DNA of 64,000 nucleotides from Macrostomum lignano (GCA_002269645.1 NIVC01000382.1:372001-436000), one strand, 5' to 3'. Counted from the stretch's first letter, positions 11,306 to 60,732 are shown. Numbers and translations are program-made. The notes: a model not told the origin generated them from the sequence alone.

Positions 11306-11379
11306 GAAAAGTCGGAGAAAGTTAATAGAAAAGTCGGAGGCACATATGCACATACGCGGGTAAGAGCTAGTCTACTCAC

Positions 11380-12386: not shown

Positions 12387-12429
12387 CTGCGGGAAGGCGT
12401 TTTGGATGATGGCCAGTGTGTACACTGAT

Positions 12430-13170: not shown

Positions 13171-13226
13171 GGTGCTATTTGAGGCTGGTTCATGTAAGTG
13201 CGGCGAGACACAAACCAGCAACTTAC

Positions 13227-14774
13227 CTTGTAGACCTGACTGTCCCGAGCCACACTCTCTAGAAAGCTGATGTCGATGGGCGAGACTGGAAAGGCCGGCG
13301 GATTGTCGTTCTCATCCTGGATGCTGACGTAGACTGTAGCGGAACTGCTGAGCGACGGCGTGCCAGCGTCGCTGCACTCAATCGACACGGTGTACTGGCT
13401 AATTAGTTCTCGATCAAACGATCTATTAGCGTACAGATTGTAGATTTTATTATCCCTATTGTTCAGCTTGACCTCCAGGTAGAAAACTTGTCGCAGCTCG
13501 GATGGTCCAACCTGGCAGGTGACCGCCCCGTTGAGTCCGGGATCCCGATCGGAGACGTCCAGGGTGTGGATAAACAAAGGCACCGGGTTATTTTCAATGA
13601 CGGATTTGTACTGATTGTCCAGATTGATTCTCGGACGGTTGTCATTGGCGTCTAGCACGTTGACGGTGACTGTGGCGGTGACGCTGAAGGCCGGCTTGCC
13701 ATTGTCTATGGCCGCAACCAGCAGCAAGTGCTGGCTAGCAGTCTCGTAGTCAAGTCCGTTGACGCGTCTCAAAGTGACCTCGCCGATAGAGTTGACGGCG
13801 AACAGTGGGTCGTCTCGGAGAAGCCGGTAGTGCACCAGGCCGAAGTCGCTGTCGGCGTCAGTGGCCGAGAGTCGCAGCAGCAGAGCTGGTGGGTTGGCCT
13901 CGGACACGTTCACGACAAAGACCTGACTAGGCGACCAGACTGGCGAGTTGTCGTTGTGATCGTGCACCCGCACGGTCAGGGTTGCAGTGGCCGTTGCACC
14001 GCCAAGTCTGCTGGACGCAGCGATGCAGAACCGGTAGCGGGACACGGTCTCCTTGTCCAGATGGCGCATCAGCTGCAGCTCGTATTCAGGAGGTCCCACG
14101 AATGAGGCGGTGGAAGACTGCTTCCTGACCAGCGAAAATGTCTTGTCGTATGCCGGATCGCCCGGTGAACACGGCGTCAAGCTGTAGACCAGCTGGCAGG
14201 TGGCGTGGCCGCCCTGATCCAAGTCCACAGCTCGCGGAAGCGGTATAGCGTGGCCCAGAGGACTATTCTCCCAGATCTCAGCCTCGGACAGAGACCGGTC
14301 AAACTTCGGCGACGAATTATCAATGTCGAGTACATCGATCAGCAGCTCTAGAATGAGCAGCTCGGCCGGGTTGTCCGAATCCCTGATCTGGACCAGGCCG
14401 GATATCTGGCACGAGTCGGCCGGGTCCGAGTCGGAACAAGCCAGCGTCGAGATAGACGGAGGGCACAGCAGTTCGCGTCTCAGCTGAGACACCAACCGCA
14501 GTTCACCTGTTGACCTGTCCAGCGATAGACTTCTGGCCGCCATCGGGGGCTTCCTGACGATCAAATTGTAGGAGATGGCGGACCACTGGGGCAGTCGGTT
14601 CAGCTGCGTCAATCGGGTCGACAGATTTTCGATGTCTATCGGCAGTCGCGAGTTCGATTCATCCGAAGTCTCTCTAACGTTGAGCTGCAGTCTGAGTGGA
14701 TCGGTTTGAACTGATCTGGCGGTTGCTAGTAGCAACCAAATTAGGAGTTGATGGTGTAGCGATGCTGGCGGCAT
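13227..14774 (-). CDS. Protocadherin (7 cadherin repeats, delta1-like architecture), exon 1: signal peptide plus EC1-EC5 start. Full model: complement join(14774..13227,12386..11380,11004..10577,5791..5562,3750..3654,3064..2805), about 1189 aa
   Basis: Signal peptide LLIWLLLATARS; repeated DxNDNxPxF linkers (DIDNSSPKF, DHNDNSPVW, DANDNRPRI, DENDNPPAF), LDKE/LDYE/FDRE and AxDxD motifs; donor AAG|GTAAGT. All six exon phases are mutually consistent. Confidence 0.93.
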
Positions 14775-15919: not shown

Positions 15920-18900
15920 CAGGGAATAGTCACTCTATTCTCACTCAGTCAGTCATTCTATTCTCACTCATTCAGTCATTCTATTCTTACTCATTCAGTC
16001 ACTCTATTCTCACTCATTCAGTCACTCTATTCTCACTCATTCAGTCACTCTATTCTCACTCAGTCAGTCATTCTATTCTCACTCATTCAGTCATTCTATT
16101 CTTACTCATTCAGTCACTCTATTCTCACTCATTCAGTCACTCTATTCTCACTCATTCAGTCACTCTATTCTCACTCATTCAGTCACTCTATTCTCACTCA
16201 TTTAGTCACTCAATTCTCACTCATTCAGTCACTCTATTCTCACTCATTCAGTCACTCTATTCTCACTCAATCAGTCATTCTATTCTCACTCATTCAGTCA
16301 CTCAATTCTCACTCATTCAGTCACTCTATTCTCACTCATTCAGTAACTCTATTCTCACTCATTCAGTCACTCTATTCTCACTCATTCAGTCACTCAATTC
16401 TCACTCATTCAGTCACTCAATTCTCACTCATTCAGTCACTCTATTCTCACTCATTCAGTCACTCTATTCTCACTCACTCAGTCACTCAATTCTCACTCAT
16501 TCAGTCACTCAATTCTCACTCATTCAGTCACTCTATTCTCACTCATTCAGTCACTCTATTCTCACTCATTCAGTCACTCAATTCTCACTCATTCAGTCAC
16601 TCTTTTCTCACTCATTCAGTCACTCTATTCTCACCAATTCAGTCACTCCATTCTCACTCATTCAGTCACTCTATTCTCACTCATTCAGTCACTCTATTCT
16701 CACTCATTCAGTCACTCAATTCTCACTCATTCAGTCACTCTATTCTCACTCATTCAGTCACTCAATTCTCACTCATTCAGTCACTCTATTCTCACTCAAT
16801 CAGTCACTCTATTCTCACTCATTCAGTCACTCAATTCTCACTCATTCAGTCACTCCATTCTCACTCATTCAGTCACTCTATTCTCTTTCATTCAGTCACT
16901 CAATTCTCACTCATTCAGTCACTCTTTTCTCACCAATTCAGTCACTCAATTCTCACTCATTCAGTCACTCTATTCTCACTCATTCAGTCACTCTATTCTC
17001 ACTCATTCAGTCACTCTATTCTCACTCATTCAGTCACTCTATTCTCACCAATTCAGTCACTCTATTCTCACTCAATCAGTCACTCTATTCTCACTCATTC
17101 AGTCACTCTATTCTCACTCATTCAGTCACTCAATTCTCACTCAATCAGTCACTCTATTCTCACTCATTCAGTCACTCAATTCTCACTCATTCAGTCACTC
17201 AATTCTCACTCATTCAGTCACTCAATTCTCACTCATTCAGTCATTCTATTCTCACTCATTCAGTCACTCTATTCTCACTCATTCAGTCACTCAATTCTCA
17301 CTCATTCAGTCACTCTATTCTCACTCATTCAGTCACTCTATTCTCACTTATTCAGTCACTTTATTCTCACTCATTCAGTCACTCTATTCTCACTCATTCA
17401 GTCATTCTATTCTCACTTATTCAGTCACTCTATTCTCACTCATTCAGTCACTCTATTCTCACTCATTCAGTCACTCTATTCTCACTTAATCAGTCATTCT
17501 ATTCTCACTCATTCAGTCACTCAATTCTCACTCATTCAGTCACTCCATTTTCACCAATTCATTCACTCTATTCTCACTCAATCAGTCACTCTATTCTCAC
17601 TCATTCAGTCACTCTATTCTCACTCATTCAGTCACTCTATTCTCACTCATTTAGTCACTCAATTCTCACTCATTCAGTAACTCTATTCTCACTTATTCAG
17701 TCACTCTATTCTCACTCATTCAGTCACTCTATTCTCACTCAATCAGTCATTCTATTCTCACTCATTCAGTCACTCTATTCTCACTCAATCAGTCACTCTA
17801 TTCTCACTCATTCAGTCACTCAATTCTCACTCATTCAGTCACTCTATTCTCACTCAATCAGTCACTCTATTCTCACTCATTCAGTCACTCAATTCTCACT
17901 CATTCAGTCACTCCATTCTCACTCATTCAGTCACTCTATTCTCTTTCATTCAGTCACTCAATTCTCACTCATTCAGTCACTCTTTTCTCACCAATTCAGT
18001 CACTCTATTCTCACTCATTCAGTCACTCTATTCTCACTCATTCAGTCACTCTATTCTCACTCATTCAGTCACTCTATTCTCACTCATTCAGTCACTCTAT
18101 TCTCACCAATTCAGTCACTCTATTCTCACTCAATCAGTCACTCTATTCTCACTCATTCAGTCACTCAATTCTCACTCATTCAGTCACTCAATTCTCACTC
18201 AATCAGTCACTCTATTCTCACTCATTCAGTCACTCTATTCTCACTCATTCAGTCACTCAATTCTCACTCATTCAGTCACTCTATTCTCACTCATTCAGTC
18301 ATTCTATTCTCACTCATTCAGTCACTCTATTCTCACTCATTCAGTCACTCAATTCTCACTCATTCAGTCACTCTATTCTCACTCATCCAGTCACTCTATT
18401 CTCACTCATTCAGTCACTCAATTCTCACTCATTCAGTCACTCTATTCTCACTCAATCAGTCACTCTATTCTCACTCATTCAGTCACTCTATTCTCACTCA
18501 TTCAGTCACTCTATTCTCACTCATTCAGTCACTCTATTCTCACTCATTCAGTCACTCTATTCTCACTCATTCAGTCACTCTATTCTCACTCATTCAGTCA
18601 CTCCATTCTCACTCATTCAGTCACTCTATTCTCTTTCATTCAGTCACTCAATTCTCACTCATTCAGTCACTCTTTTCTCACCAATTCAGTCACTCAATTC
18701 TCACTCATTCAGTCACTCTATTCTCACTCATTCAGTCACTCTATTCTCTTTCATTCAGTCACTCAATTCTCACTCATTCAGTCACTCTATTCTCACTCAT
18801 TCAGTCACTCTATTCTCTTTCATTCAGTCACTCAATTCTCACTCATTCAGTCACTCTATTCTCACTCATTCAGTCACTCTATTCTCACCAATTCAGTCAC

Positions 18901-19865
18901 TCTATTCTCACTCAATCAGTCACTCTATTCTCACTCATTCAGTCACTCTATTCTCACTCATTCAGTCACTCAATTCTCACTCAATCAGTCACTCTATTCT
19001 CACTCATTCAGTCACTCAATTCTCACTCATTCAGTCACTCAATTCTCACTCATTCAGTCACTCTATTCTCACTCATTCAGTCATTCTATTCTCACTCATT
19101 CAGTCACTCTATTCTCACTCAGTCAGTCACTCTATTCTCACTCATTTAGTCACTCTATTCTCACTCATTCAGTCACTCAATTCTCACTCATTCAGTCACT
19201 CAATTCTCACTCATTCAGTCACTCAATTCTCACTCAATCAGTCACTCTATTCTCACTCATTCAGTCACTCTATTCTCACTCATTCAGTCACTCTATTCTC
19301 ACTCATTCAGTCACTCTATTCTCACTCATTCAGTCACTCTATTCTCACTCATTCAGTCACTCTATTCTCACTCATTCAGTCACTCCATTCTCACTCATTC
19401 AGTCACTCTATTCTCTTTCATTCAGTCACTCTATTCTCACTCATTCAGTCACTCTATTCTCACTCATTCAGTCACTCAATTCTCACTCATTCAGTCACTC
19501 TATTCTCACTCATTCAGTCACTCTATTCTCACTTATTCAGTCACTCTATTCTCACTCATTCAGTCACTCTATTCTCACTCATTCAGTCATTCTATTCTCA
19601 CTTATTCAGTCACTCTATTCTCACCAATTCAGTCACTCTATTCTCACTCATTCAGTCACTCTATTGTCACTCATTCAGTCACTCTATTCTCACTCATTCA
19701 GTCACTCTATTCTCACTCATTCAGTCACTCTATTCTCACTCAATCAGTCACTCTATTCTCACTCATTCAGTCACTCTATTCTCACCAATTCAGTCACTCT
19801 ATTCTCACTCAATCAGTCACTCTATTCTCACCAATTCAGTCACTCTATTCTCACCAATTCAGTCA
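15920..19865. repeat. 23-bp minisatellite, about 3.9 kb (cactctattctcactcattcagt)
   Basis: About 170 copies; explains the spurious 1094-aa and 591-aa ORFs. Confidence 0.97.
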
Positions 19866-20332
19866 CATTTTATCCCTCACAGCTGGTTTGGATGAAGCTT
19901 CAGTAGATTTAAAGGAGGCTGGAGATGCTGGTGGGTTTATCCAGATCAGCTCTGACCCAAATTCAAGACTCATCTCAATTTCCTATCGCCTCCACTTTTT
20001 TGACTCTCAAAGGCGGCCGTCACAATGAGATGCAGATCCGCACCAGCATGCGGGTTTTTTCGAATTTTGGAAAACTGGCATGATTGGGGGGGAATACGAG
20101 CTTAAAAAAGCCTGTCCGAGATCTGGGCGAAAAAAATAATTTTACCTCAAAATTTTCGAATAATAATTATTCGATACGAAAACTATGAATAATTAGCCGC
20201 CTTGGAGGTTGGCATCGAAAGACTTTTTTTGCGATTTCCAGAGCTGAACTTTTCCTGCATCTTTTAAAGTGATTCATGTAGTGACAAAGCCTTTAAAATC
20301 CTCAATTATGGCGGATTCTGGCGCCTGATGGA

Positions 20333-28965: not shown

Positions 28966-29629
28966 CGCCCCTACATGTATTCCATAAAATTGGTGTCCAT
29001 TTAATAAATTTGGCACCCGATCTCTATTTGTCTCCCAATCAGCATCTTAGTGTCACAAAACTAATAATGTAATACATAATATTAACTAGTGTTTAACTAC
29101 AGTATCGCATTTATGCTATATTAATGCTCTATAAAACTTGATTAGTAGGTGTCACAAGCCAATAAGCACATATACAAAAAGATTTGACGTACATGTACAC
29201 CTTTCGTATCCAGAAGACTCAGAAAAAGAAGCCAATTGATTCTAATACTTTATCGGGGCTGTCCACTATAAAAGAGTCTGCGCTGGCATTGCACTGCCCC
29301 GATCAAATATTGACCAAGAAAACACCCTGCCATTGGTGTTCAGCTTTGCTTCTATGCATAAATGCCCGAAGAAACTGATAAGAGGATTCGATAGTATGAT
29401 TTACCTATCGCTAATAAGTATAGAGGTTTGTATAGCATGGCAAATGTGGCTTCTGTGAACGCCCCCTCCCTATATTATAGTTGCTGATAAGGTATTGTAT
29501 ATTTATAAGAATGCCGTAAATTGAACTGGATTCTGTGTTAAGATATTCTTTTTAAAATCAAGGCATTTCTGAAAGACCGAGGATTCAGAAATAATAAATT
29601 CTTAATTAAAATAGATAAAATGGATAGCT

Positions 29630-30530
29630 TCTCATAGAGAACAGATTACCGATTCTCATAGAGAATAAATGACGATTCGCATAGAGAATAGATGATTTGC
29701 ATAGAGAATAGATGGCGATTCTCATAGAGAATAAATGACGATTCGCATAGAGAATAGATGATTTGCATAGAGAATAGATGGCGATTCTCATAGAGAATAA
29801 ATGACGATTCGCATAGAGAATAGATGATTTGCATAGAGAATAGATGGCGATTCTCATAGAGAATAAATGACGATTCGCATAGAGAATAGATGATTTGCAT
29901 AGAGAATAGATGGCGATTCTCATAGAGAATAAATGACGATTCGCATAGAGAATAGATGATTTGCATAGAGAATAGATGGCGATTCTCATAGAGAATAAAT
30001 GACGATTCGCATAGAGAATAGATGATTTGCATAGAGAATAGATGGCGATTCTCATAGAGAATAAATGACGATTCGCATAGAGAATAGATGATTTGCATAG
30101 AGAATAGATGGCGATTCTCATAGAGAATAAATGACGATTCGCATAGAGAATAGATGATTTGCATAGAGAATAGATGGCGATTCTCATAGAGAATAAATGA
30201 CGATTCGCATAGAGAATAGATGATTTGCATAGAGAATAGATGGCGATTCTCATAGAGAATAGATAACGATTCTGACAGAGAATAAATCGCGATTCTTAAA
30301 TAGAATAGATGGCGATTCTGGACTCTCATTAGAATAGAGATTGTGATTCGCATAGAGAATAGATGGCGATTCTCAAAGAGAATAGATGCGATTCTCGTAT
30401 AGAAAAGGTGCCGATTCTCAAAGAGATAAGATTGCGATTCTTATATAGAGAATAGATGGAGATTCTCATAGAGAATATAAGGTGATTCTCAATCTCATAT
30501 AGAGAATAGATGGAGATTCTTATAGAGAAG
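29630..30530. repeat. Minisatellite with a 66-bp higher-order unit (23+20+23 bp; core cgattctcatagagaatagatg)
   Basis: 22-aa periodicity in the ORF translations; about 9 near-perfect higher-order copies plus degenerate flanks. Confidence 0.92.
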
Positions 30531-30949
30531 TGATTGCACTAAAGAGAATATATGCAGGAAGATTAAAACCCGGCAGGATAGATAAATAGTATCAGCATGG
30601 AGGACTACATATATACAATTGTCAGCTTTACAACTGCACAACGTTGTCAATTACTTACCAAATATTTCCTTAACAAATCGGTCCTTCAAGGTTGCAGACT
30701 CAGAAAGATGCTATATATTAATTTTTTGCTGAAATCCACAAGTTTAAAAGCCGAGCTGGCTGATGTTGAACTGCAGGAAATTTAGCCGGCATCAAATGCC
30801 ATATATTATATATTATAAAAGCGGCTAAATCCTTTATCAGCATACGTTACCTCTAGCTATCTAAGGCCAACTATCATTGGCTCCCATAGGAACTATCAGG
30901 TAGCCAATGAGTAGTTGAGGACATTCTTCTTGTATAGAAATTCGATGAA

Positions 30950-31250: not shown

Positions 31251-32352
31251 TTCCAGAGACTGCTCGATCCCTCATTGACCCTTTCTGCGGTTTAGAGAAG
31301 GAATTAAACAGCCGAGCACCAACGAGTCACATCCTCTGACCAAACCGGACTTGATCTGTGACCTATGCGCGTTCATATAGCAGAACTCCCGGCGACTTTC
31401 TACTGCTGGCGCTAAAACAGGGGGCCTCGCGGCTAATTAGGCAAGGGCCACGGATGGGACTCGCAGGACACAGCTCATTCCATTAACAAACCCAGAAGTG
31501 CAGGCTGCATAAAAGTACAGTGCGTCCGCGCAAGTTTTATTTTCAATTACCACGTTTTTACCATACTTTTTCCAGGGCTTGATTTTTTTACAATTTTTAG
31601 TGAAGCTTGTTTTTTTTTAAATTCAGTTCATGGTCAAGCATTTTGCGTAAGAAGTTTTTTAACACTTGCCGATTTTTGGGAAATTTTTTAGGTCATTTTT
31701 TGTTATTAAGACTCTTCCCGATTGGGGACGCCCTAGAAATAGCAGTGTTATGGCCTTTGTTTTTGTCATTAAGTCAATCGGGCTGTATAAACCGTGGCCC
31801 ACTTTATCCGCGAGATGCATTACTGCCCATTCCGCGAATCCCCTGAGCAGGCAAGGATATACATACACAGGAGTGTACAGCAGCCCTAACTTTATTTATC
31901 GTTAGGCATGTACACTTCACTGTGTCTTGAGGTTTGGCCCTCAATGACGTTAATTGCACGAGCAGAGCCAAGCAAGCCGTGTTAGTAAAGTAAAAAAGTA
32001 TAGAAAACTTTTTAATTCGCGACAGCAATAAAATTTGCTTTTCATTAGTTTGTGTTGATTAAAAAATCAGGATAAAAAAGCTATCAATCCTACTAATAGT
32101 AGACAGAATCTACCCTACACTGAACCTACTGAAAATATATTTATTTAGGCAATACAGAGAAGTACTTGAAGTACATAGAACAAATGTAAGTAGTCAAAAT
32201 TCTAAAATGTCAAAAAATACTGTTCAAATGATTCCTTTGATGAGATCCGAGAATTCTGAAAATTTGGAGACAAATGAAATGTTTTTGCAATTTTACTACG
32301 TTTAACCGTGAAGTAAAATCAGTAAGAGAAATTCATAAATGGTTTTCTTTCA

Positions 32353-32432
32353 TCAGACGACGCGCATGATTTCGTAATCAGTAGTTGCCAAGATTAACAA
32401 CTTTAGAGAGATTCCCAATAGTTTATCATCAT
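32353..32432 (-). ncRNA. Box C/D snoRNA, dual 28S guide, copy 1
   Basis: Minus strand reads ATGATGA (C)...GGGAATCTCT-CTAA (D' guide + D')...CTGATTA (C')...TCATGCGCGTC-GT-CTGA (D guide + D). The guides are complementary to 28S GAGAUUCCCA and GACGCGCAUGA. Confidence 0.88.
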
Positions 32433-32474
32433 CGATTTCTAATGTTGATTGCAGTGCTGCAAGGGCGTTATTTG

Positions 32475-33675
32475 AGGGCTGAGGGGGATTCTTATAGATG
32501 GTTGAGGGGTGATTCTTACAGATTGCTCAGGGCGATGCTTATAGGCCGAGGGGCGATTCTTATAGATGGCTGAGGGGCGATTATTATAGATGGCTGAGGG
32601 GCGATTCTCATAGATGGCTGAGGGGTGATTCTTATAGATGGCTGAGGGGCGATTCTCATAGATGGCTGAGGGGTGATTCTTATAGATGGCCGAGGGGCGA
32701 TTCTCATAGATGGCTGAGGGGTGATTCTTATAGATGGCTGAGGGGCGATTCTCATAGATGGCTCAGGGGTGATTCTTATAGATGGTTGAGGGGTGATTCT
32801 TATAGATGGTTGAGGGGTGATTCTTATAGATGGCTGAGGGGTGATTCTTACAGATGGCTGAGGGGCGATTCTTATAGATGGTTGAGGGGTGATTCTTATA
32901 GATGGCTGAGGGGTGATTCTTATAGATGGCTGAGGGGTGATTCTTACAGATGGCTGAGGGGCGATTCTTATAGATGGTTGAGGGGTGATTCTTATAGATG
33001 GCTGAGGGGTGATTCTTATAGATGGCTGAGGGGTGATTCTTATAGATGGCTGAGGGGTGATTCTTACAGATGGCTGAGGGGTAATTCTTATAGATGGCTG
33101 AGGGCGATTCCTATAGATGGCTGAGGGGTGATTCTTACAGATGGCTGAGGGGTGATTCCTACAGATGGCTGAGGGGCGATTCTTATAGATGGTTGAGGGG
33201 TGATTCTTATAGATGGTTGAGGGGTGATTCTTATAGATGGTTGAGGGGTGATTCTTATAGATGGCTGAGGGGTGATTCTTACAGATGGCTGAGGGGCGAT
33301 TCTTATAGATGGTTGAGGGGTGATTCTTATAGATGGCTGAGGGGTGATTCTTATAGATGGCTGAGGGGTGATTCTTACAGATGGCTGAGGGGCGATTCTT
33401 ATAGATGGCTGAGGGCGATGCTTATAGGCCGAGGGGCGATTCCTACAGATGGCTCAGGGGTGATTCATATAGATGGCTGAGGGGCGATTCTTATAGATGG
33501 CTGAGGGCGATGCTTATAGGCCGAGGGGCGATTCCTACAGATGGCTCAGGGGTGATTCATATAGATGGCTGAGGGGCGATTCTTATAGATGGCTGAGGGC
33601 GATGCTTATAGGCCGAGGGGCGATTCTTACAGATGGCTCAGGGGTGATTCTTATAGATGGCTGAGGGGTAATTCT
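32475..33675. repeat. 24-bp minisatellite (gctgaggggtgattcttatagatg)
   Basis: About 50 copies. Confidence 0.95.
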
Positions 33676-33884
33676 TTCGATTAAAAAATATCAAACTAGA
33701 CAAAATAGTTCAAAGCAGACATACCGAGGAACATTGGTTAAACCGATTAACCAAGCCCAATGTTAAAAATTTCGGAGCAATGATGTGGTACATCTAAAAA
33801 TAGATTGAATAAAAAAGATGCTTGAGTCTATTTTGACATGAAAATGAAAATTTACGTCATTTAAAATTAGTCAATTATTAAAAC

Positions 33885-33966
33885 TCAGACGACGCGCATG
33901 ATTTTGTAATCAGAAGCTGTCAAAAGATTTTGAAAGCTTTAGAGAGATTCCCAAGGTTATCATCAT
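33885..33966 (-). ncRNA. Box C/D snoRNA, dual 28S guide, copy 2
   Basis: Same C, D', C', D boxes and guides; internal hairpin agct..tcaaa/tttga..agct. Confidence 0.88.
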
Positions 33967-34195
33967 TGAAGAAAACTAAATTAAGCAGATGCATGTGCTA
34001 TAACAGTATGCCTACCTGTGTGTCCGATTGAGGCACTAGAAATGATTTATCTCGATAGAAAGACAATGAAAATTTTCATCTGCCGACATAAATCGAATCT
34101 GAAAGTTTTTTTCAAAGAACGAACCGATATTTTAGAATTAATGATGACAACGTATTAATGTTATAAAACTAAAAAAACATAACGTTTAATTCAAG

Positions 34196-34279
34196 TCAGA
34201 CGACGCGCATGATTTTGTAATCAGTAGCTTAAGATTAAATTTCTAAAGCTTTAGAGAGATTCCCAATAGTTATCATCAT
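34196..34279 (-). ncRNA. Box C/D snoRNA, dual 28S guide, copy 3
   Basis: Same boxes and guides. Confidence 0.88.
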
Positions 34280-34344
34280 TAAAATACAGTGATTTTTTAA
34301 GTATGAGCCAACTCAGGGGCGGTTTGAGAGCGACTCTTAGGAGT

Positions 34345-34945
34345 TGTCTATGGCCGATTCTCATGGATTGTCTATGGCCGATTCTCTTGGGTTGTCTATG
34401 GCCGATTCTCTTGGGTTGTCTATGGCCGTTTCTCATGGATTGTCTATGGCCGATTCTCTTGGGTTGTCTATGGCCGTTTCTCATGGATTGTCTATGGCCG
34501 ATTCTCTTGGGTTGTCTATGGCCGATTCTCTTGGGTTGTCTATGGCCGATTCTCTTGGGTTGTCCATGGCCGATTCTCATGGATTATCTATGGCCGATTC
34601 TCATGCATTTTCTATGGCCGATTCTCATGGATTGTCTATGGCCGATTCTCTTGGGTTGTCCATGGCCGATTCTCATGAATTATCTATGGCCGATTCTCTT
34701 GGGTTGTCCATGGCCGATTCTCATGAATTATCTATGGCCGATTCTCTTGGATTGTCTATGGCCGATTCTCTTGGGTTGTCCATGGCCGATTCTCATGAAT
34801 TATCTATGGCCGATTCTCTTGGATTGTCTATGGCCGATTCTCTTGGGTTGTCCATGGCCGATTCTCATGAATTATCTATGGCCGATTCTCTTGGATTGTC
34901 TATGGGTGATTCTCATGGGTTGTCTATGGGCGATTGTCAGGGTCT
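34345..34945. repeat. 24-bp minisatellite (tgtctatggccgattctcttgggt)
   Basis: About 25 copies. Confidence 0.95.
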
Positions 34946-35159
34946 ATAGACAATTCTAATTCTGATCTATGGGTGACATTGCCAAATTGTATAGTGATGT
35001 TTACTGTGTGAAATACTTACCAAACCTCCGATTTCAAGCCAACAACCGTAAATATTTCAACAAAAACCACGTTGCTCTGAAATTACGCAAAAAATCTGCT
35101 ATGTTTCTCGCACGTAGAAATATCATTGGCTACTGTAAATAATATTAAGTAACTTGGAA

Positions 35160-35238
35160 TCAGACGACGCGCATGATTTTGTAATCAGTAGCTTAGATAT
35201 CCTTAGCTTTAGAGAGATTCCCTATAGATTATCATCAT
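35160..35238 (-). ncRNA. Box C/D snoRNA, dual 28S guide, copy 4
   Basis: Same boxes and guides (D' guide is 9 nt in this copy). Confidence 0.88.
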
Positions 35239-35299
35239 CGATTGTACTTGGAAGATGAAATGCTCTAAAGCTGGTTTTGTGCATTTCTTATAAGAGTTG

Positions 35300-35705
35300 A
35301 AGGGCGATTCTTGAGCTGGTTTAGGGGCGATTCTTAGGGTAGTTTAGGGGCGACTTTTAGGGTGGTTTAGGGGCGATTTTTAGGGTGGTTTAGGGGCGAT
35401 TCTTAGGGTGGTTTAGGGGCGATTTTTAGGGTGGTTTAGGGGCGATTCTTAGGGTAGTTTAGGGGCGACTTTTAGGGTGGTTTAGGCTTTATGGGCGATT
35501 CTTAGGGTAGTTTTAGGGGCAATTTTTAGGGTGGTTTAGGGGTGATTTTTAGGGTGGTTTAGGGGCGATTATTAGGGTATTCTAGGGCTGATTCTTAGGG
35601 TAGTTTAGGGGCGATTATTAGGGTATTCTAGGGGTGATTCTTAGAGTAGTTTAGGCGAGATTCTTAGAGTGGTTAAGGGGCGATTTCTGGGGTGGTTTAG
35701 GGGCG
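35300..35705. repeat. Degenerate 24-bp minisatellite (tttaggggcgattcttagggtggt), rich in TTAGGG
   Basis: About 17 copies. Confidence 0.9.
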
Positions 35706-35970
35706 ATTAATAGAAATACTTCAGGCAAATTGCTAAAAAGGGTTACGGCGATTTTTAAGGGTATTTAAGGTCGAAGATGGAGAACTTTAAAAACAGATTC
35801 ACAACACTTTATTGATCCTACTTACCACATCCTAATATTTACAGTTAACAGACTAATTCCACAACCGCTCTAAAAATAGCGACCTGAAAAATGCGAACGA
35901 TTAAAAATCAAATAAACCCAACTGCTATAACAATAAAGTTTTTAATAAGCAATGAAGCTAAAGATGAAAC

Positions 35971-36057
35971 TCAGACGACGCGCATGATTTCGTAATCAGT
36001 AGCTTTTAGATTCGAAAATCTGAAGCTTTAGAGAGATTCCCAAAATGTTATCATCAT
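35971..36057 (-). ncRNA. Box C/D snoRNA, dual 28S guide, copy 5
   Basis: Same boxes and guides; the internal stem is capped by a UUCG loop (agcttcagatt-ttcg-aatctaaaagct). Confidence 0.9.
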
Positions 36058-36107
36058 TTCTTGAATGTGTACTTGTGCTCTGCAGACTACTTAGTGTGTT
36101 TCTTAGA

Positions 36108-37670
36108 ATGGGCTTCAGGCCTATTCTTGGAAGGGGCTTAAGGGCCATTCTTGGAAGGGGCTTAAGGGACATTCTTGGAAGGAGCTTAAGGGCCATTCTT
36201 GGAAGGGGTTTAAGGGCCATTCTTGGAAGGGGTTTAAGGGCCATTCTTGGAAGGGGTTTAAGGGCCATTCTTGGAAGGTGTTTAAGGGCCATTCTTGGAA
36301 GGGGTTTAAGGGCCATTCTTGGAAGGTGTTTAAGGGCCATTCTTGGAAGGGGTTTAAGGGCCATTCTTGGAAGGGGTTTAAGGGCCATTCTTGGAAGGGG
36401 TTTAAGGGCCATTCTTGGAAGGGGTTTAAGGGCCATTCTTGGAAGGGGCTTAAGGGCCATTCTTGGAAGGGGCTTAAGGGACATTCTTGGAAGGAGCTTA
36501 AGGGCCATTCTTGGAAGGGGTTTAAGGGCCATTCTTGGAAGGGGTTTAAGGGCCATTCTTGGAAGGGGCTTAAGGGCCATTCTTGGAAGGGGTTTAAGGG
36601 CCATTCTTGGAAGGGGTTTAAGGGCCATTCTTGGAAGGTGTTTAAGGGCCATTTTTGGAAGGGGTTTAAGGGCCATTCTTGGAAGGGGTTTAAGGGCCAT
36701 TCTTGGAAGGGGTTTAAGGGCCATTCTTGGAAGGGGTTTAAGGGCCATTCTTGGAAGGAGCTTAAGGGCCATTCTTGGAAGGTGTTTAAGGGCCATTCTT
36801 GGAAGGGGTTTAAGGGCCATTCTTGGAAGGGGTTTAAGGGCCATTCTTGGAAGGGGCTTAAGGGACATTCTTGGAAGGGGCTTAAGGGACATTCTTGGAA
36901 GGGGTTTAAGGACCATTCTTGGAAGGGGTTTAAGGGCCATTCTTGGAAGGGGTTTAAGGGCCATTCTTGGAAGGGGTTTAAGGGCCATTCTTGGAAGGGG
37001 TTTAAGGGCCATTCTTGGAAGGGGTTTAAGGGCCATTCTTGGAAGGGGTTTAAGGGCCATTCTTGGAAGGGGTTTAAGGGCCATTCTTGGAAGGGGTTTA
37101 AGGGCCATTCTTGGAAGGGGTTTAAGGGCCATTCTTGGAAGGGGTTTAAGGGCCATTTTTGGAAGGGGTTTAAGGGCCATTCTTGGAAGGGGTTTAAGGG
37201 CCATTCTTGGAAGGGGTTTAAGGACCATTCTTGGAAGTGGCTTAAGGGCCATTCTTGGAAGGGGTTTAAGGGCCATTCTTGGAAGGGGTTTAAGGGCCAT
37301 TCTTGGAAGGGGCTTAAGGGCCATTCTTGGAAGGGGCTTAAGGGCCATTCTTGGAAGGGGTTTAAGGGCCATTCTTGGAAGGAGCTTAAGGGTCATTCTT
37401 GGAAGGGGTTTAAGGGCCATTCTTGGAAGGGGTTTAAGGGCCATTCTTGGAAGGGGTTTAAGGGCCATTCTTGGAAGGGGTTTAAGGGCCATTCTTGGAA
37501 GGGGTTTAAGGGCCATTCTTGGAAGGGGTTTAAGGGCCATTCTTGGAAGGGGCTTAAGGGCCATTTTTGGAAGGGCTTAAGGGTCATTCTTGGAAGAGGT
37601 TTAAGGGCCACTCTAGGAGGGGAGTTAAGGGCCATTCTTAAAAGGGGTTTAAGGGCAATGTTTTTAAGGA
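36108..37670. repeat. 24-bp minisatellite (ggccattcttggaaggggtttaag)
   Basis: About 63 copies; source of the spurious 465-522 aa ORFs. Confidence 0.96.
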
Positions 37671-37955
37671 GTTAAAGAGCGGTTATTGTAGTGATTTTTA
37701 AAGGAATTATAAAAGTTGTTTTATACCTAGATAGTAACTGACTATTTCCTAGTGAAACAAACATAAAAACATGAAAAATTAGTTTTACATAGATAATAAT
37801 CACGCACCTTACATTAGTTGAACTGGAAATTACAACCGCACGTATTCAGCTCGAATCCGTATCTCTAGAAATATCTAAAAATAAAGATAAATATGATAGT
37901 TACTATAAAAAATTATAAAGCTTTTTATAACTTGTTTATCTAAAAGTTCCCTTAG

Positions 37956-38029
37956 TCAGACGACGCGCATGATACTGTAATCAGTAGCTTATGTAAAGCT
38001 TTAGAGAGATTCCCATTAGTTATCATCAT
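37956..38029 (-). ncRNA. Box C/D snoRNA, dual 28S guide, copy 6
   Basis: Same boxes and guides; shortest internal stem. Confidence 0.88.
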
Positions 38030-38261
38030 TATAGATACCGATATAATTACTAGAATGCTGATATGCACTTACACGGAAAATGAAATCTTGAAAACGCCAT
38101 GAAATAAAACTTCATTTTGAAATATCGTCTTGATAATCGGTGCGTGTTGTTCAAGTCGTTACGATGTTTCTGAAACAAAAAATCAATATGCTACTTTAAG
38201 TAGAAATGTCCAGAAATTAATAAAACTCTTAGTCATGATAATTATAAAGTCGTAATTCTTT

Positions 38262-38790
38262 GAAGGGTATATTGAAGGTCAATCTTGTTTCACAGGGGCG
38301 ATTCTGTAGAGGGTATATTGAAGGTCAACCTTGTGACATAGGCCCGTTTCTGTAGAGGGTATATTGAAGGTCAATCTTGTGTCATCGGCCTGTTTCTGTA
38401 GAGGGTATATTGAAGGTCAATCTTGTGTCATAGGCCCGTTTCTGTAGAGGGTATATTAAAGGTTATACTTGTGTCACTGAGGGAATTCTGTAGAGGGCAT
38501 ATTGAAGGTCAACCTTGTGACATAGGCCCGTTTCTGTAGAGGGTATATTGAAGGTTATACTTGTGTCACTGAGGGAATTCTGTAGAGGGTATATTGAAGG
38601 TCAACCTTATGACATAGGCCCGTTTCTGTAGAGGGTATATTGAAGGTCAATCTTGTGTCATCGGCCTGTTTCTGTAGAGGGTATATTGAAGGTCAATCTT
38701 GTGTCATAGGCCCGTTTCTGTAGAGGGTATATTAAAGGTTATACTTGTGTCACTGAGGGAATTCTGTAGAGGGCATATTGAAGGTCAATC
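38262..38790. repeat. 46-bp minisatellite (gtatattgaaggtcaaccttgtgacataggcccgtttctgtagagg)
   Basis: About 11 copies. Confidence 0.92.
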
Positions 38791-39693
38791 TTGCGTTTAA
38801 ACTAAAAAGAACAATTAATCATATAGGATCTAAATATAGTCAAATAAGCAAAACAAGAATAGAGAACAGGTCCAGTAAAAAAGCACAAACTTCGAAAATG
38901 GTGTGCCACAAACTCGCATAGCCCGGAACTTAATAAATAAGCCTAGACATTACAGGCCCGAGCTGAGCTTTACACGACAAACAGCAGCATTATTCATTTA
39001 GTATTATTATTCATATATATATTATTGTATTGTAGATTTAGTAGGTCAATTAACTGCAAAATAGAAACATAATTAACAAACTTAACGATTGGCCAATTAC
39101 AGCTGTTTAGCATGTACTACTATAAGTATTAACTAGTTATATTAGAAACGAGAATAGTTACATTTTATTAATAGTTATAACTTTGTTATTATGATAACTT
39201 TGAAAAATAACTTTCTAAATGCAAACGACACCAATAAAACAAACCACATACACTACTCAAATATGCAACTCATTATTCACCCAATAAACCAACATTATAA
39301 TCAATAGTTTTTATTAAAACACGACACAACAGTGACACCGGATTTAGTACAAAAAACCAACTGAAAACAAGTTTCGCTTCCGATGAAATTTGTTGGTTTA
39401 GAAACGAACAATGCACAGCGTACACAACTCACTACCTGCCTGTGTATGTAAGTAGAAATGACGGAGCATTGGAATTAAAATTTTTAGTTGCGCATAAAAA
39501 TAGAGACCAAAATATAGTGCGATATTTTTAATATTCCCAGATTTGACAATAACTGCGGCACAAAGATGAGAATAAATGAATATTGTTTTGGATTATCCAG
39601 CAGCTACCAAAATTAGGGATGGGTGGCTCACAGTTTACAGACTGTTTTTTGCATAAACAAAAATTGCCAGTATTAATATCCGCCATCTACTGC

Positions 39694-39782
39694 TCAATCA
39701 TCCTCGTTTTCGTCAGCGTTGTCTTCCTCTTCACCGACGTCCTCTTCGTCCAGATCCTCTTCTTCATCGTCGTCTTCCTCGT
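39694..39782 (-). CDS. SET: SET / TAF-I beta exon 4 (acidic tail DEEDDDEEEDLDEED...EDD*)
   Basis: Acceptor aattcccgcag, phase 1, stop TGA. Confidence 0.88.
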
Positions 39783-40889
39783 CTGCGGGGAATTAGTGGG
39801 TCCACGATGCTTCAGTGACTGCACAGATACCCCCCTGATGCTTCAGATATCACACAGATACCCTCTGATGCTTTAGATATCACACAGATACCCTCTGATG
39901 CTTTAGATATCACACAGGTACCCTCTGATTCTTCAGTTATCACACAGGTACCCTCTGATGCTTCAGTTATCACACAGGTACCCTCTAATGCTTCAGATAT
40001 CACACAGGTACCCCCTGATGCTTCAGTTATCACACAGGTACCCTCTGATGCTTCAGTTATCACACAGGTACCCTCTAATGCTTCAGATATCACACAGGTA
40101 CCCCCTGATGCTTCAGTTATCACACAGGTACCCTCTGATTCTTCAGTTATCACACAGGTACCCTCTGATTCTTCAGTTATCACACAGGTACCCTCTGATG
40201 CTTCAGTTATCACACAGGTACCCTCTAATGCTTCAGATATCACACAGGTACCCCCTGATGCTTCAGATATCACACAGGTACCCTCTGATGCTTCAGATAT
40301 CACACAGGGAACCCTCTAATGCTTTAGATATCACACAAGTACCCTCTGATGCTTCAGTTATCACACAGGTACCCTCTAATGCTTCAGATATCACACAGGT
40401 ACCCCCTGATGCTTCAGATATCACACAGGTACCCCCTGATGCTTCAGATATCACACAGGTACCACCTGATGTCTCAGATATCACACAGATACCCTCTGAT
40501 GCTTCAGATATCACACAGGTACCCCCTGATGCTTCAGATATCACACAGATACCCCCTGATGCTTCAGTTATCACACAGATACCCCCCGATGCTTCAGATA
40601 TCACACAGGTACCACCTGATGCTTCAGTTATCACACAGGTACCCTCTAATGCTTCAGATATCACACAGGTACCACCTGATGCTTCAGATATCACACAGGT
40701 ACCCTCTGATGCTTCAGATATCACACAGGTACCCCCTGATGCTTCAGATATCACACAGGTACCCTCTGATCAGTGGTGTGATTGGAAAGTTTGCCAAATT
40801 TCGCGCCGACTGAAAATTTTCGCGCCATGCCAATGATATTCTACTGACAGCCAAATAAGTCAATTGATGACACTTTTAAGATGCGTCTG

Positions 40890-41164
40890 CATACATACGC
40901 AACTGCTGGCCGACCTGGCCGATCTGGCCACTGTAAATTGTGGTGGACCAGGGGTAAGTCGCAAAAATGCCCACCCCAAAGAATAGACATAGTACTAGTT
41001 AGATGACGAGGCATTCAGCCCTTGTAAGAGAGTCATAGTTACTCCTGCCGTTTACCCAAAATTGCGTTAATGTTGCTCTAGGGTTTTTTTCACAGGTAAG
41101 TCGGATTTTTGGTCAAAAAGTAAGTCGCATGGCCAGTGTAAATCAGGGGGGTTGCGCATGTATG
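40890..41164. mobile_element. hAT-type MITE carrying a 28S rRNA fragment (copy A), nested in the element above
   Basis: TIR catacatacgcaac/gttgcgcatgtatg; 8-bp TSD tgcgtctg (40882-40889 and 41165-41172). Confidence 0.9.
40994..41057 (-). pseudogene. 64-nt 28S rRNA-derived fragment (helix 69-71 region) inside the MITE
   Basis: 55/64 ungapped identity to the conserved GGGTAAACGGCGGGAGTAACTATGACTCTCTTAAGGTAGCCAAATGCCTCGTCATCTAATTAGT (compared from memory). Confidence 0.85.
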
Positions 41165-42115
41165 TGCGTCTGGCTACCAATTAGCATGTCTCTCAAGTCC
41201 CAGCCGTGTCCCGCCTGAACTTCTTGTTGGCGATGTTGGGTGGAATCTTTGAATCTGGGCAAATGGCCATCAGATCCTCGGCAAAGGTCCTCTTCTGATT
41301 CGAAGCTGCGATTCTTCAGTGCAATCCTGACAACACATCTGATCTCTGCCACCCTTGCAGACGTAGCAGCCACATCTTCAGTGTCACTTTGCTTCTTTGC
41401 GACCACGAAATTCTCTACGAATCTCGAAATTCTCGAGATTAATCTCCTAAGCTATGACATTCTTGTATTTCATACTGTCTGACAAGAGAATAAGTGTAAA
41501 AAGCAGAAAATAAGAATGCAATTTTCGCGCCCATGGTTCCACAAAATTTCGCGCCAGACCCCCAGGATTCGCGCATTCGCGCCATTTTCGCGCCTGGCGC
41601 GAATTCGCGCCTGAATCACACCACTGCCTCTGATGCTTCAGATATCACACAGGTACCCCCTGATGCTTCAGATATCACACAGGTACCCTCTGATGCTTCA
41701 GATATCACACAGGTACCCCCTGATGCTTCAGATATCACACAGGTACCCTCTGATGCTTCAGATATCACACAGGTACCCCCTGATGCTTCAGATATCACAC
41801 AGGTACCCTCTGATGCTTCAGATATCACACAGGTACCCCCTGATGCTTCAGATATCACACAGGTACCCTCTGATGCTTCAGATATCACACAGGTACCCCC
41901 TGATGCTTCAGATATCACACAGATACCCCCTGATGCTTTAGATATCACACAGGTACCACCTGATGCTTCAGATATCACACAGATACCCCCTGATGCTTCA
42001 GATATCACACAGGTACCCCCTGATGCTTCAGTTATCACACAGATACCCTCTGATGCTTCAGTTATCACACAGATACCCCCTGATGCTCCGCATGCAATTG
42101 CTAATCGAAACTCAC

Positions 42116-42484: not shown

Positions 42485-43025
42485 ATAAATATTCACTGGA
42501 TTGCTAGACTATCACTCACCTGAATTTTCAGTGGATTGCTAGACTGACACTCACCTGAATATTCACTGGATTGCTAGACTGACACTCACCTGAATATTCA
42601 CTGGATTGCTAGACTGACACTCACCTGAATATTCACTGGACTGCTAGACTGACACTCACCTGAATATTCACTGGATTGCTAGACTGACACTCACCTGAAT
42701 ATTCACTGGACTGCTAGACTAACACTCACCTGAATATTCACTGGACTGCTAGACTAACACTCACCTGAATATTCATTGGATTGCTAGACTGACACTCACC
42801 TGAATATTCACTGGATTGCTAGACTGACACTCACCTGAATATTCACTGGACTGCTAGACTAACACTCACCTGAATATTCACTGGACTGCTAGACTAACAC
42901 TCACCTGAATATTCATTGGATTGCTAGACTGACACTCACCTGAATATTAATTGGATTGCTAGACTGACACTCACCTGAATACTCAGTGGATTGCTAGACT
43001 GACACTCACCTGAATACTCAGTGGA
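42485..43025. repeat. 35-bp minisatellite in SET intron 2; each unit reads ...atattCAG|GTGAGT... on the gene strand
   Basis: About 15 copies of aatattcactggattgctagactgacactcacctg. Confidence 0.95.
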
Positions 43026-43143
43026 TTACTACATCAAATCACAATACACTTTTGTAGTTTCATAAGTGACTTTTATTCACCCAAAAACTATTCCCTATTT
43101 AACCGATTTTAAATTGATGAAAGATTATTAAAAAATCACTCAC

Positions 43144-60665: not shown

Positions 60666-60732
60666 TTGACATTGTGCTTTTTTGTGTTTAGCATTTTGTG
60701 TTTTTAAGATTTTTGAATAAAAAAATCTTTTT

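What the first reader, a model, noticed from the sequence alone, without database searches (positions are those of the whole stretch)
32256..38800. Hidden non-coding host gene: one snoRNA paralogue per intron, fixed distance from the 3' splice site
Seen: minus-strand acceptors at 37875, 35884, 35077, 34099, 33794 and 32256 lie 81, 87, 83, 97, 91 and 97 nt downstream of the six D boxes. Five are followed after 56-83 nt by strong donors (37812, 35825, 35020, 34015, 33724). Established: intronic C/D snoRNAs typically sit about 70-90 nt from the 3' splice site, and GAS5/UHG-type hosts have short non-coding exons. Unusual point: known hosts mostly carry different snoRNAs, whereas here one exon-intron-snoRNA module appears serially duplicated. 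The gene is invisible in the ORF track and lies just downstream of SET on the same strand, so it could be independent, read-through or polycistronic.
Basis: partly seen in the sequence, partly recalled or inferred. Interest (0 to 1): 0.75.

Follow-up and report, generated by a model that had tools for sequence, protein, structure and literature searches.

The report
Six-copy snoRNA host gene below SET
Just downstream of the SET gene lies what looks like a spliced, non-coding "host" gene with six introns, each carrying one copy of the same small RNA that guides two ribosomal RNA methylations; this layout is already known from flies and mammals.

Summary
Six copies of one box C/D snoRNA lie on the minus strand. 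Each is followed 81-97 nt later by a TTTYAG acceptor. Five acceptors are followed by a 56-83 nt AT-rich exon and a GTRNGT donor. I add an upstream exon (38169-38073), so copy 1 also sits in a 198-nt intron, and a terminal exon with AATAAA at 32145. The spliced model has stops in all frames.

The snoRNA is a double guide. Its D' element is the SNORD79 guide (human 28S A3809 equivalent, assigned from memory). Its D element pairs with GUGACGCGCAUGA (C3787, SNORD10 equivalent). Boxes and guides are invariant, while spacers, flanks and exons are saturated and an internal hairpin is kept by compensatory changes.

The interpretation as a UHG/GAS5-type host is well supported by sequence but has no RNA evidence. 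The claim of unusualness fails. Drosophila mfl/Uhg6 (four DmSnR60 isoforms, one per intron, about 70 nt from the 3' splice site), other fly Uhgs and SNORD116 arrays are precedents.

The promoter is unresolved: the gene's own, or a SET 3' extension as in mfl/Uhg6. A related contig carries SNORD79 inside a SET intron. Verdict: a new member of a known kind, of moderate to low interest.

The parts
37956..38029 (-). snoRNA copy 1 (C box to D box, 74 nt), in a 198-nt intron
   Evidence: 95.6 bits
35971..36057 (-). snoRNA copy 2 (87 nt)
   Evidence: 104.5 bits
35160..35238 (-). snoRNA copy 3 (79 nt)
   Evidence: 101.2 bits
34196..34279 (-). snoRNA copy 4 (84 nt)
   Evidence: 104.5 bits
33885..33966 (-). 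snoRNA copy 5 (82 nt), in a 222-nt intron
   Evidence: 103.2 bits
32353..32432 (-). snoRNA copy 6 (80 nt). Its internal hairpin carries two compensatory pair changes.
   Evidence: 101.9 bits
38073..38169 (-). Acceptor tttgtttcag| at 38170, donor CCGT|GTAAGT at 38072.
37813..37874 (-). Predicted exon b (62 nt, or 67 nt if the overlapping donor at 37807 is used)
35826..35883 (-). Predicted exon c (58 nt)
35021..35076 (-). Predicted exon d (56 nt)
34016..34098 (-). Predicted exon e (83 nt)
33725..33793 (-). Predicted exon f (69 nt)
32120..32255 (-). Predicted terminal exon. It has AATAAA at 32145-32140 followed by a GT-rich stretch; the 3' end is approximate.
36100..37656 (-). 24-bp minisatellite (65 units) in intron 2, entirely 5' of the snoRNA
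35302..35708 (-). 23-bp minisatellite (17 units) in intron 3, 5' of the snoRNA; unit related to those of introns 2, 4 and 6
34334..34935 (-). 24-bp minisatellite (25 units) in intron 4, 5' of the snoRNA
32477..33676 (-). 24-bp minisatellite (51 units) in intron 6, 5' of the snoRNA
38264..38793 (-). 46-bp minisatellite upstream of exon a. It lies either in a first intron or outron, or in the spacer between SET and the host gene.
39290..39782 (-). SET last exon: acidic tail, stop codon at 39696-39694, 3' UTR, and AATAAA at 39315-39310. Candidate donors at 39435/39432 lie inside the 3' UTR.

Best explanation
A Pol II transcript on the minus strand, running from at least 38169 to about 32120, is spliced into at least seven short AT-rich non-coding exons. 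Each of its six introns releases one copy of the same box C/D snoRNA by exonucleolytic trimming of the debranched intron.

The snoRNA is a double methylation guide for two sites 22 nt apart in domain IV of 28S rRNA. The D' element (GGGAAUCUCU followed by a CUAA D' box) is the SNORD79 guide and targets the A of CGAGA*UUCCC, the human A3809 equivalent. The D element (AUCAUGCGCGUCGU followed by CUGA) pairs over 13 bp with GUGAC*GCGCAUGA, the human C3787 (SNORD10) equivalent.

The copies lack terminal stems. Their snoRNP assembly is therefore inferred to depend on splicing, which would explain why every copy is held 81-97 nt from the 3' splice site while minisatellites have expanded freely on the 5' side only. 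The spliced exons are a by-product and probably unstable.

What is shown: the sequences, boxes, guides, complementarity, splice-site geometry and lack of an ORF. What is inferred: transcription, splicing, processing and methylation. The promoter is not resolved. It is either the gene's own, in 39.3-38.2 kb, or the SET promoter through read-through and alternative 3' splicing.
For: - Six copies, with boxes and both guides invariant (47 positions), while the spacers, the loop and all flanks differ.
- The D'-C' hairpin is kept in all six copies despite lengths of 15-27 nt, with two compensatory pairs.
- The D' guide is identical to the Rfam SNORD79 consensus and similar to fly Me28S-Am2634.
- The target strings are confirmed as 28S: GTGACGCGCATGAATGGA, ACGAGATTCCCACTGTCCC, and the Rfam LSU consensus ...UAAUUAGUGAC.
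- C3787 is methylated under SNORD10 guidance (PMC5027482). The predicted 22-nt spacing equals 3809 minus 3787.
- All six acceptors are TTTYAG at 81-97 nt (P about 1e-9 or less).
- The only strong donors in the 6 kb are the exon ends.
- The spliced model is non-coding.
- AATAAA follows the last acceptor.
- No conserved upstream motif was found.
- No terminal stems were found.
- The same architecture is experimentally established in Drosophila mfl/Uhg6.
Against: - There is no RNA evidence of any kind, and the organism is unidentified.
- The splice PWM is generic and not calibrated on this species. The acceptors score only 5-8 on it, and the claimed acceptor of module 4 (34099) is not among the four best-scoring AGs downstream of its D box on this PWM; it is recognised only by the TTTYAG motif.
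- The TTTYAG motif was defined after seeing the data.
- The 5' exon and promoter were not found, and no 5'TOP-like start was found in 39.3-38.2 kb.
- The snoRNA fails Rfam gathering scores (22 vs 47 bits).
- No homologue of the double-guide form was found elsewhere.
- The D' box is CUAA rather than CUGA.
- The A3809 assignment for SNORD79 rests on my memory.
Confidence: 0.8

Rival explanations
1. The cluster is not an independent gene but an alternative 3' extension of SET. A fraction of SET pre-mRNAs would bypass the AATAAA at 39315. They would splice from a donor in the SET 3' UTR (39435/39432) or from an upstream SET exon to the acceptor at 38170, and end at 32145. SET would then be the host, and the extended isoform would be an NMD substrate. 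This is a sub-variant of the intronic-host model that concerns only the promoter.
For: - Exon a begins with a strong acceptor (38170), so an upstream donor is required.
- The only donors scoring at least 5 upstream of it are 39435/39432, inside the SET 3' UTR. None lies between SET's poly(A) site and 38170.
- The cluster is on the same strand, only 1.1 kb away.
- In the related contig L001 a bona fide SNORD79 (47.4 bits) lies inside a SET coding-region intron.
- There are two Drosophila precedents in which an annotated non-coding Uhg proved to be fused to the upstream coding gene: mfl/Uhg6 and RpL23A/Uhg7.
Against: - SET has a canonical AATAAA followed by a GT-rich element.
- The spacer holds a CCAAT box and a TATA-like run that could serve as an own promoter (read).
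- A real SET donor scores only 4.6 on my PWM, so the weak donors at 39280 (4.9) and 39161 (4.3) cannot be dismissed.
- The other SET loci fetched show no snoRNA.
Confidence: 0.4
2. The six snoRNAs are made without splicing. They would come either from one unspliced polycistronic precursor cut by endonucleases, as in plant and yeast clusters, or each from its own promoter. The splice-site-like motifs would be incidental.
For: Polycistronic and independently transcribed snoRNA genes exist in plants, fungi, nematodes and trypanosomes (established knowledge). No RNA data exclude this here.
Against: - The regular acceptor-exon-donor pattern at every unit is far beyond chance.
- Spacing to the acceptor is constrained, while spacing to the previous donor varies 40-fold.
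- There is no conserved upstream promoter element, and the 5' flanks are unrelated or made of minisatellite.
- Units are 0.3-2 kb apart rather than tightly packed.
Confidence: 0.08
3. The short exons belong to a protein-coding or micropeptide gene, and the snoRNAs are ordinary passengers in its introns.
For: Most animal snoRNAs reside in protein-coding hosts (established knowledge). A 40-aa ATG ORF exists in the spliced model.
Against: - All three frames of the 561-nt spliced model carry many stops.
- Exon lengths do not keep the reading frame.
- Exons are 61-66% A+T and show no similarity to each other.
- No non-repeat ORF of 90 aa or more lies in the region.
Confidence: 0.03

Closest known systems
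Drosophila mfl (dyskerin) 3'-UTR introns / 'dUhg6' with DmSnR60 a-d (Riccardo et al. 2007, PMC1821038)
   Same: Several isoforms of one bifunctional C/D snoRNA, with both the D and D' guides directed at 28S. There is one per intron, and all sit at a near-constant distance (about 70 nt) from the 3' splice site. The exons are short and non-coding. The cluster lies immediately downstream of a housekeeping protein-coding gene on the same strand, and is attributed to local duplications.
   Different: Here there are six copies rather than four. The spacing is 81-97 nt. Four introns are inflated by minisatellites. The snoRNA targets different 28S sites, and the upstream gene is SET. Linkage to the upstream gene is proven in the fly and only a possibility here.
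GAS5 / UHG-type non-coding snoRNA host genes (human GAS5 hosts SNORD79)
   Same: Spliced non-coding exons without sequence constraint, one C/D snoRNA per intron near the 3' splice site, and a snoRNA carrying the SNORD79 guide.
   Different: GAS5 introns carry ten different snoRNAs; here there is one snoRNA six times. A 5'TOP start, which defines GAS5/UHG, could not be located here. The snoRNA here also carries a second guide (SNORD10 function) that human SNORD79 lacks.
SNORD116 / SNORD115 tandem arrays in SNHG14 (IPW-A exons; PMC4742849, PMC12429941) and SNORD113/114 in MEG8
   Same: A repeated unit of non-coding exon plus intron carrying one copy of the same C/D snoRNA, transcribed as one long host RNA.
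   Different: The mammalian arrays have 24-48 highly similar units with alignable exons. They are imprinted, eutherian-specific, and hold orphan snoRNAs without rRNA targets. Here there are six old units with unalignable exons and canonical rRNA guides.
Rfam SNORD79 (RF00152, clan CL00069) and fly snoMe28S-Am2634 (RF00537)
   Same: An identical or near-identical D' antisense element, GGGAAUCUC(U).
   Different: Scores are 22.4 and 21.4 bits against gathering thresholds of 47 and 50. The D' box is CUAA, and there is an additional 13-bp D guide absent from those families.

Membership tests
Box C/D snoRNA (2'-O-methylation guide) | C box RUGAUGA near the 5' end and D box CUGA at the 3' end | tested here: met
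   AUGAUGA and CUGA are invariant in all six copies, 74-87 nt apart.
Box C/D snoRNA (2'-O-methylation guide) | Internal D' and C' boxes | tested here: met
   D' is CUAA (one change from CUGA) and C' is UGAUUA (one change from UGAUGA). Both are invariant in six copies and are bridged by a conserved hairpin.
Box C/D snoRNA (2'-O-methylation guide) | An antisense element of at least 10 nt directly upstream of D or D', placing a known rRNA methylation site at the fifth pair | tested here: met
   D guide: 11 Watson-Crick plus 2 G-U pairs with GUGACGCGCAUGA, with the fifth position at the C methylated in human (C3787, SNORD10). D' guide: 10 bp with GAGAUUCCCA, the same guide as SNORD79. The human numbering of A3809 is from memory. 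The species' own rRNA was not available.
Box C/D snoRNA (2'-O-methylation guide) | Terminal stem bringing the C and D boxes together | tested here: not met
   Flank duplex energies are only -0.1 to -2.9 kcal/mol. This is common for intronic snoRNAs that rely on splicing-coupled assembly and is not disqualifying.
Box C/D snoRNA (2'-O-methylation guide) | Stable RNA of about 70-90 nt bound by fibrillarin/Nop56/Nop58 | not testable with these tools
   No expression data.
Rfam SNORD79 (RF00152) | Score at or above the curated gathering threshold (47 bits) | tested here: not met
   Best copy scores 22.4 bits, E=6.1, and there is no hit at gathering. The L001 snoRNA passes with 47.4 bits.
UHG/GAS5-type non-coding snoRNA host gene | One snoRNA per intron, located about 70-90 nt upstream of the 3' splice site | tested here: met
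   Six of six predicted introns, with distances of 81-97 nt. The splice sites are predicted, not observed.
UHG/GAS5-type non-coding snoRNA host gene | Spliced exons lack a conserved ORF and are less conserved than the intronic snoRNAs | tested here: met
   Stops in all frames and a longest ORF of 40 aa. Exons are mutually unalignable while the snoRNAs are 84% identical with invariant functional parts.
UHG/GAS5-type non-coding snoRNA host gene | 5'TOP transcription start (a C followed by a pyrimidine tract) | tested here: inconclusive
   The first exon was not located. No purine followed by C and at least seven pyrimidines was found in 39.3-38.2 kb. One YYCTTTYY match at about 38813 coincides with an acceptor tract (read).
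UHG/GAS5-type non-coding snoRNA host gene | Polyadenylated spliced RNA, unstable through NMD | not testable with these tools
   Only AATAAA at 32145 can be shown.
Coding-gene 3' extension host (mfl/Uhg6, RpL23A/Uhg7 type) | The cluster lies directly downstream of a coding gene on the same strand, and transcripts join the two | tested here: inconclusive
   Position and strand are met (SET AATAAA at 39315, exon a at 38169). Candidate donors at 39435/39432 lie in the SET 3' UTR. Joining transcripts cannot be tested.
SNORD115/116-type tandem repeat array | Many near-identical repeat units including the exons; orphan snoRNAs | tested here: not met
   The exons and flanks show no significant similarity, and the snoRNA has canonical rRNA guides.

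The most novel reading that the evidence does not exclude
SET is the true host. An ancestral SNORD79 in a SET intron, as still seen in contig L001, would have been replaced in this lineage by a six-fold amplified version placed in an alternative, NMD-prone 3' extension of SET. That version would have fused the SNORD79 and SNORD10 guide functions into one RNA. This would couple the dosage of two H71-region 28S methylations to SET transcription and to its choice of poly(A) site. The one-sided minisatellite expansions would also provide a natural in vivo demonstration of the position rule for splicing-dependent C/D snoRNP assembly outside vertebrates and flies.
Probability: 0.3. Interest if true: 0.45.

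Novelty: new member of a known kind. Interest (0 to 1): 0.3.

Why it matters
If confirmed, this adds a clean invertebrate example of a UHG-type or 3'-extension snoRNA host. It shows six old paralogues each kept functional. It shows one snoRNA doing the jobs that two separate snoRNAs (SNORD79 and SNORD10) do in humans.

It also offers a natural experiment. Kilobase-scale minisatellites are tolerated between the 5' splice site and the snoRNA, but nothing is tolerated between the snoRNA and the 3' splice site. This agrees with the splicing-coupled assembly model.

For genome annotation, it is a reminder that such genes are invisible to ORF-based callers. It is also a reminder that 'independent' non-coding hosts lying just downstream of a coding gene should be tested for fusion to that gene. 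None of this changes current understanding.

Tried and rejected
- Rfam at gathering thresholds over the whole window gave no hit. At E up to 10 there were only weak C/D hits, plus spurious mir-765 hits on the minisatellite.
- One scan of metagenome contigs for the two-guide pattern returned a single GC-rich bacterial coding sequence, L005. This is a chance match.
- Nine SET loci from related eukaryotic contigs were fetched: L001-L004 and L006-L010. Only L001 carries a related snoRNA, and none has the six-copy cluster or the D guide.
- Organism identification failed. The best SET matches (81% or less) are unnamed metagenome or Logan contigs. The only named relatives are a jellyfish, an oyster, insects and vertebrates at 66-78%.
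- Exon-versus-exon similarity was tested to prove module duplication and was not significant.
- The search for a 5'TOP start or a strong first-exon donor between SET's poly(A) site and exon a found nothing convincing.
- The bacterial-type promoter and terminator scan is irrelevant to a eukaryote and was ignored.
- Branch-point motifs are uninformative in sequence this AT-rich.
- I first misplaced the rRNA target at the yeast C1437 region from memory. I corrected it to domain IV (H71 region) using the Rfam LSU alignment and the literature.
Full report
OBSERVATION

On the minus strand, the 18-mer ATCATGCGCGTCGTCTGA occurs six times with no mismatch, against 0.01 expected by chance. Each occurrence ends a 74-87 nt unit that begins with AUGAUGA. 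A covariance model built from the six units recovers exactly these six in the window (95-105 bits). It finds nothing else in the window or in nine related loci.

- 37875, 35884, 35077, 34099, 33794 and 32256 are the G of AG in TTTTAG or TTTCAG contexts.
- They lie 81, 87, 83, 97, 91 and 97 nt after the D boxes.
- 37812, 35825, 35020, 34015 and 33724 are the G of GTAAGG, GTAAGT, GTAAGT, GTAGGC and GTATGT.
- The resulting exons are 62, 58, 56, 83 and 69 nt long.

IS IT MORE THAN CHANCE?

TTTYAG occurs only 42 times on the whole minus strand. A random anchor has one 81-97 nt downstream with probability 0.012, or 0.032 for a generous 60-110 nt window. Six of six therefore gives about 1e-12 to 1e-9. 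Using the higher local density of the AT-rich flanks it is still about 3e-8. The motif was chosen after seeing the data, so these figures are indicative only.

Independently, a generic donor matrix finds very few donors scoring at least 5 on the minus strand between 38.1 and 32.3 kb. They are the five claimed donors, the overlapping 37807, and one more at 38072. Every strong donor is preceded 56-97 nt upstream by a TTTYAG acceptor.

- The acceptor at 38170 (tttgtttcag|) and the donor at 38072 (CCGT|GTAAGT) define a 97-nt exon upstream of copy 1. Copy 1 therefore lies in a 198-nt intron.
- After the last acceptor there is AATAAA at 32145-32140, followed by GT-rich sequence.

The model therefore has seven exons (97, 62, 58, 56, 83, 69 and about 136 nt) and six introns (198, 1929, 749, 922, 222 and 1469 nt). 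The 561-nt spliced product has stops in all frames, and its longest ATG ORF is 40 codons.

THE snoRNA

The organisation, 5' to 3', is:
- C box AUGAUGA
- a 7-9 nt variable spacer
- GGGAAUCUCU
- D' box CUAA
- a 15-27 nt hairpin
- C' box (A/U)CUGAUUA
- a 4-nt spacer
- AUCAUGCGCGUCGU
- D box CUGA

All boxes and both antisense elements are invariant in the six copies. The spacers and the loop differ freely. The hairpin is maintained in every copy, and copy 6 has two compensatory pair changes, AGCUU/AAGCU to AGUUG/CAACU.

Flanks on both sides are essentially randomised. The copies are therefore old, and each has been kept by purifying selection or gene conversion limited to the functional RNA.

TARGETS

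The D' element is identical to the guide of the Rfam SNORD79 consensus (AUGGGAAUCUCUCUGAA). It is close to that of fly Me28S-Am2634. It pairs over 10 bp with GAGAUUCCCA of 28S; the sequence ACGAGATTCCCACTGTCCC is confirmed as 28S in PMC1919474.

The D element pairs through 11 Watson-Crick and 2 G-U pairs with GUGACGCGCAUGA.
- GTGACGCGCATGAATGGA is a human 28S primer (PMC12391393).
- The Rfam eukaryotic LSU consensus reads ...UAAUUAGUGAC at model position 2310.

By the fifth-nucleotide rule, the modified residues are the C of GUGAC*G and the A of GAGA*UU, 22 nt apart. Human C3787 is fully methylated under SNORD10 guidance (PMC5027482). From my memory of snoRNABase, SNORD79 guides A3809, and 3809 minus 3787 is 22. 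The RNA is therefore a double guide that combines the SNORD79 and SNORD10 functions.

It does not reach any Rfam gathering score (22 vs 47 bits). I describe it as SNORD79-related, not as a member of that family.

HOW IT MOST LIKELY WORKS

The geometry is that of splicing-dependent intronic C/D snoRNP assembly. The distance to the 3' splice site is held at 81-97 nt, while the distance from the 5' splice site ranges from 43 to 1755 nt. All four intronic minisatellites (24, 23, 24 and 24 bp units; 17-65 copies) lie 5' of the snoRNA, and none lies between a snoRNA and its acceptor. The copies have no terminal stem.

By contrast, the SNORD79 in the related contig L001 has a 9-bp external stem and sits 161 nt from its acceptor. 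This matches the known dichotomy between position-dependent snoRNAs and stem-assisted ones, which I recall from Hirose and Steitz. The 70-nt rule is quoted in PMC1821038.

No conserved upstream element that could be a snoRNA promoter exists. I therefore give about 0.8 to a spliced non-coding host and about 0.1 to unspliced or independent expression.

MODULE DUPLICATION

The snoRNAs are clearly paralogous. The minisatellite units of introns 2, 3, 4 and 6 are related to each other (RAGAAUCRCCC...). All ten pairwise comparisons among these four units and a related downstream array at 29633-30477 are best in the same orientation. Several pairs score above most control comparisons, although the best control score (16) matches or exceeds all but two of the ten. 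The ancestral unit therefore probably included an intronic repeat seed. The exons are not significantly similar to each other. Duplication of the whole module is thus plausible but not demonstrated at the exon level.

RELATION TO SET

SET lies on the minus strand.
- Its NAP exons are at 43449-43144 and 42422-42116.
- Its acidic-tail exon starts at 39782, with the stop codon at 39696-39694.
- AATAAA is at 39315-39310 and is followed by GT-rich sequence.

Exon a starts 1.1 kb further on. Because it starts with a strong acceptor, an upstream donor, or a trans-spliced leader, is needed. The only upstream donors scoring at least 5 are 39435/39432, inside the SET 3' UTR. Between the SET poly(A) site and exon a there are only weak donors, 39280 (4.9) and 39161 (4.3). 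A genuine SET donor scores just 4.6, so these cannot be dismissed. A CCAAT box (about 39092) and a TATA-like run (about 39012) could form an own promoter (read).

In L001 (SET exon 78% identical), a bona fide SNORD79 (47.4 bits) lies in the SET intron between the ...QYYL exon and the next exon. A SET-SNORD79 linkage therefore exists in two lineages.

In Drosophila, two annotated non-coding hosts turned out to be 3' extensions of the upstream coding gene. These are mfl/Uhg6 (PMC1821038) and RpL23A/Uhg7 (PMC5932544). I cannot decide between an own promoter and a SET extension, and I rate them roughly equal.

COMPARISON WITH WHAT IS KNOWN

The 'unusual point' is not unusual.
- mfl/Uhg6 carries four isoforms of one bifunctional 28S-directed C/D snoRNA. 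There is one per intron, and all lie about 70 nt from the 3' splice site.
- PMC5932544 calls its mixed cluster Uhg-46E3 atypical partly because its members cannot have arisen through local duplications, which implies that typical fly Uhgs do arise that way.
- The SNORD116 array consists of non-coding IPW-A exons with intronic snoRNA copies (PMC4742849).

The locus is therefore a new member of a known kind. Its modest particularities are the fused SNORD79 and SNORD10 guide set, the SET linkage, and the one-sided minisatellite expansions.

LIMITS

- No RNA data were available, and the organism is unidentified.
- The species' own rRNA was not available.
- The splice matrices are generic.
- No orthologous locus with the same cluster was found.

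Noticed in passing
window 40992-41075 (minus strand), inside the last SET intron (42115-39783): There is a fragment of about 55-80 nt resembling eukaryotic 28S rRNA (Rfam LSU model positions 2255-2310, 25.8 bits, E=5e-4). It covers GGAGUAACUAUGACUCUCUUA...AAUGCCUCGUCAUCUAACUAGU and breaks off exactly where the snoRNA's D-guide target (GUGACGCGCAUGA) would begin. It could be a remnant of an rDNA-specific retroelement junction or an rRNA pseudogene fragment. The coincidence with the snoRNA target is unexplained.
   Followed up: partly
L001 12651-12735 (+), ENA metagenome contig ERZ25767047 ctg39108: A bona fide SNORD79 (47.4 bits, just above gathering) lies in a coding-region intron of the SET orthologue. 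It has a 9-bp external stem (CTGTCATGT/ACATGACAG) and sits 161 nt upstream of the 3' splice site. It has the D' guide only, with no SNORD10-type D guide.
   Followed up: yes
window 29569-30728 (minus strand): There is a further host-like unit about 1.4 kb below the predicted poly(A) site. It has a 70-nt AT-rich exon (acceptor 30729, donor TATTTG|GTAAGT at 30658). This is followed by a 1.09-kb intron filled by a 23/66-bp minisatellite (29633-30477) whose unit (GAGAATCGCCATCTATTCTCTAT) is related to the host-intron units, and then an acceptor at 29569. It holds no snoRNA. It could be a decayed seventh module, a continuation of the host transcript, or another gene.
   Followed up: partly
window 42488-43031 (minus strand), first SET intron seen: A 35-bp minisatellite (15.5 units) carries in every unit a perfect consensus 5' splice site (TTCAG|GTGAGT). 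It lies directly downstream of the real and much weaker SET donor (TTT|GTGAGT at 43143). That makes about 15 tandem decoy donors inside an intron of a housekeeping gene.
   Followed up: no
whole window: Minisatellite load is extreme. About 25 kb of the 64 kb (roughly 39%) lies in about 30 tandem arrays with TRF score of at least 200 and periods of 4-178 bp. These include a 3.9-kb 23-bp array (15928-19866) and a 3.1-kb 23-bp array (57587-60676). The same 30-bp unit occurs twice in the last SET intron (39822-40770 and 41630-42087). All long 'ORFs' in the finding's region are translations of these arrays.
   Followed up: partly
window 11376-14774 (minus strand): Two long open exons (349 and 550 aa) look like a protocadherin or cadherin-type protein, judged by eye only from the translations; no family or homology search was run. 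They are separated by a 53-bp minisatellite. They are unrelated to the finding.
   Followed up: no
window 37807/37812 and 35870/35884 (minus strand): There are alternative splice-site pairs. At exon c, tandem TTTYAG acceptors lie 14 nt apart.
   Followed up: no
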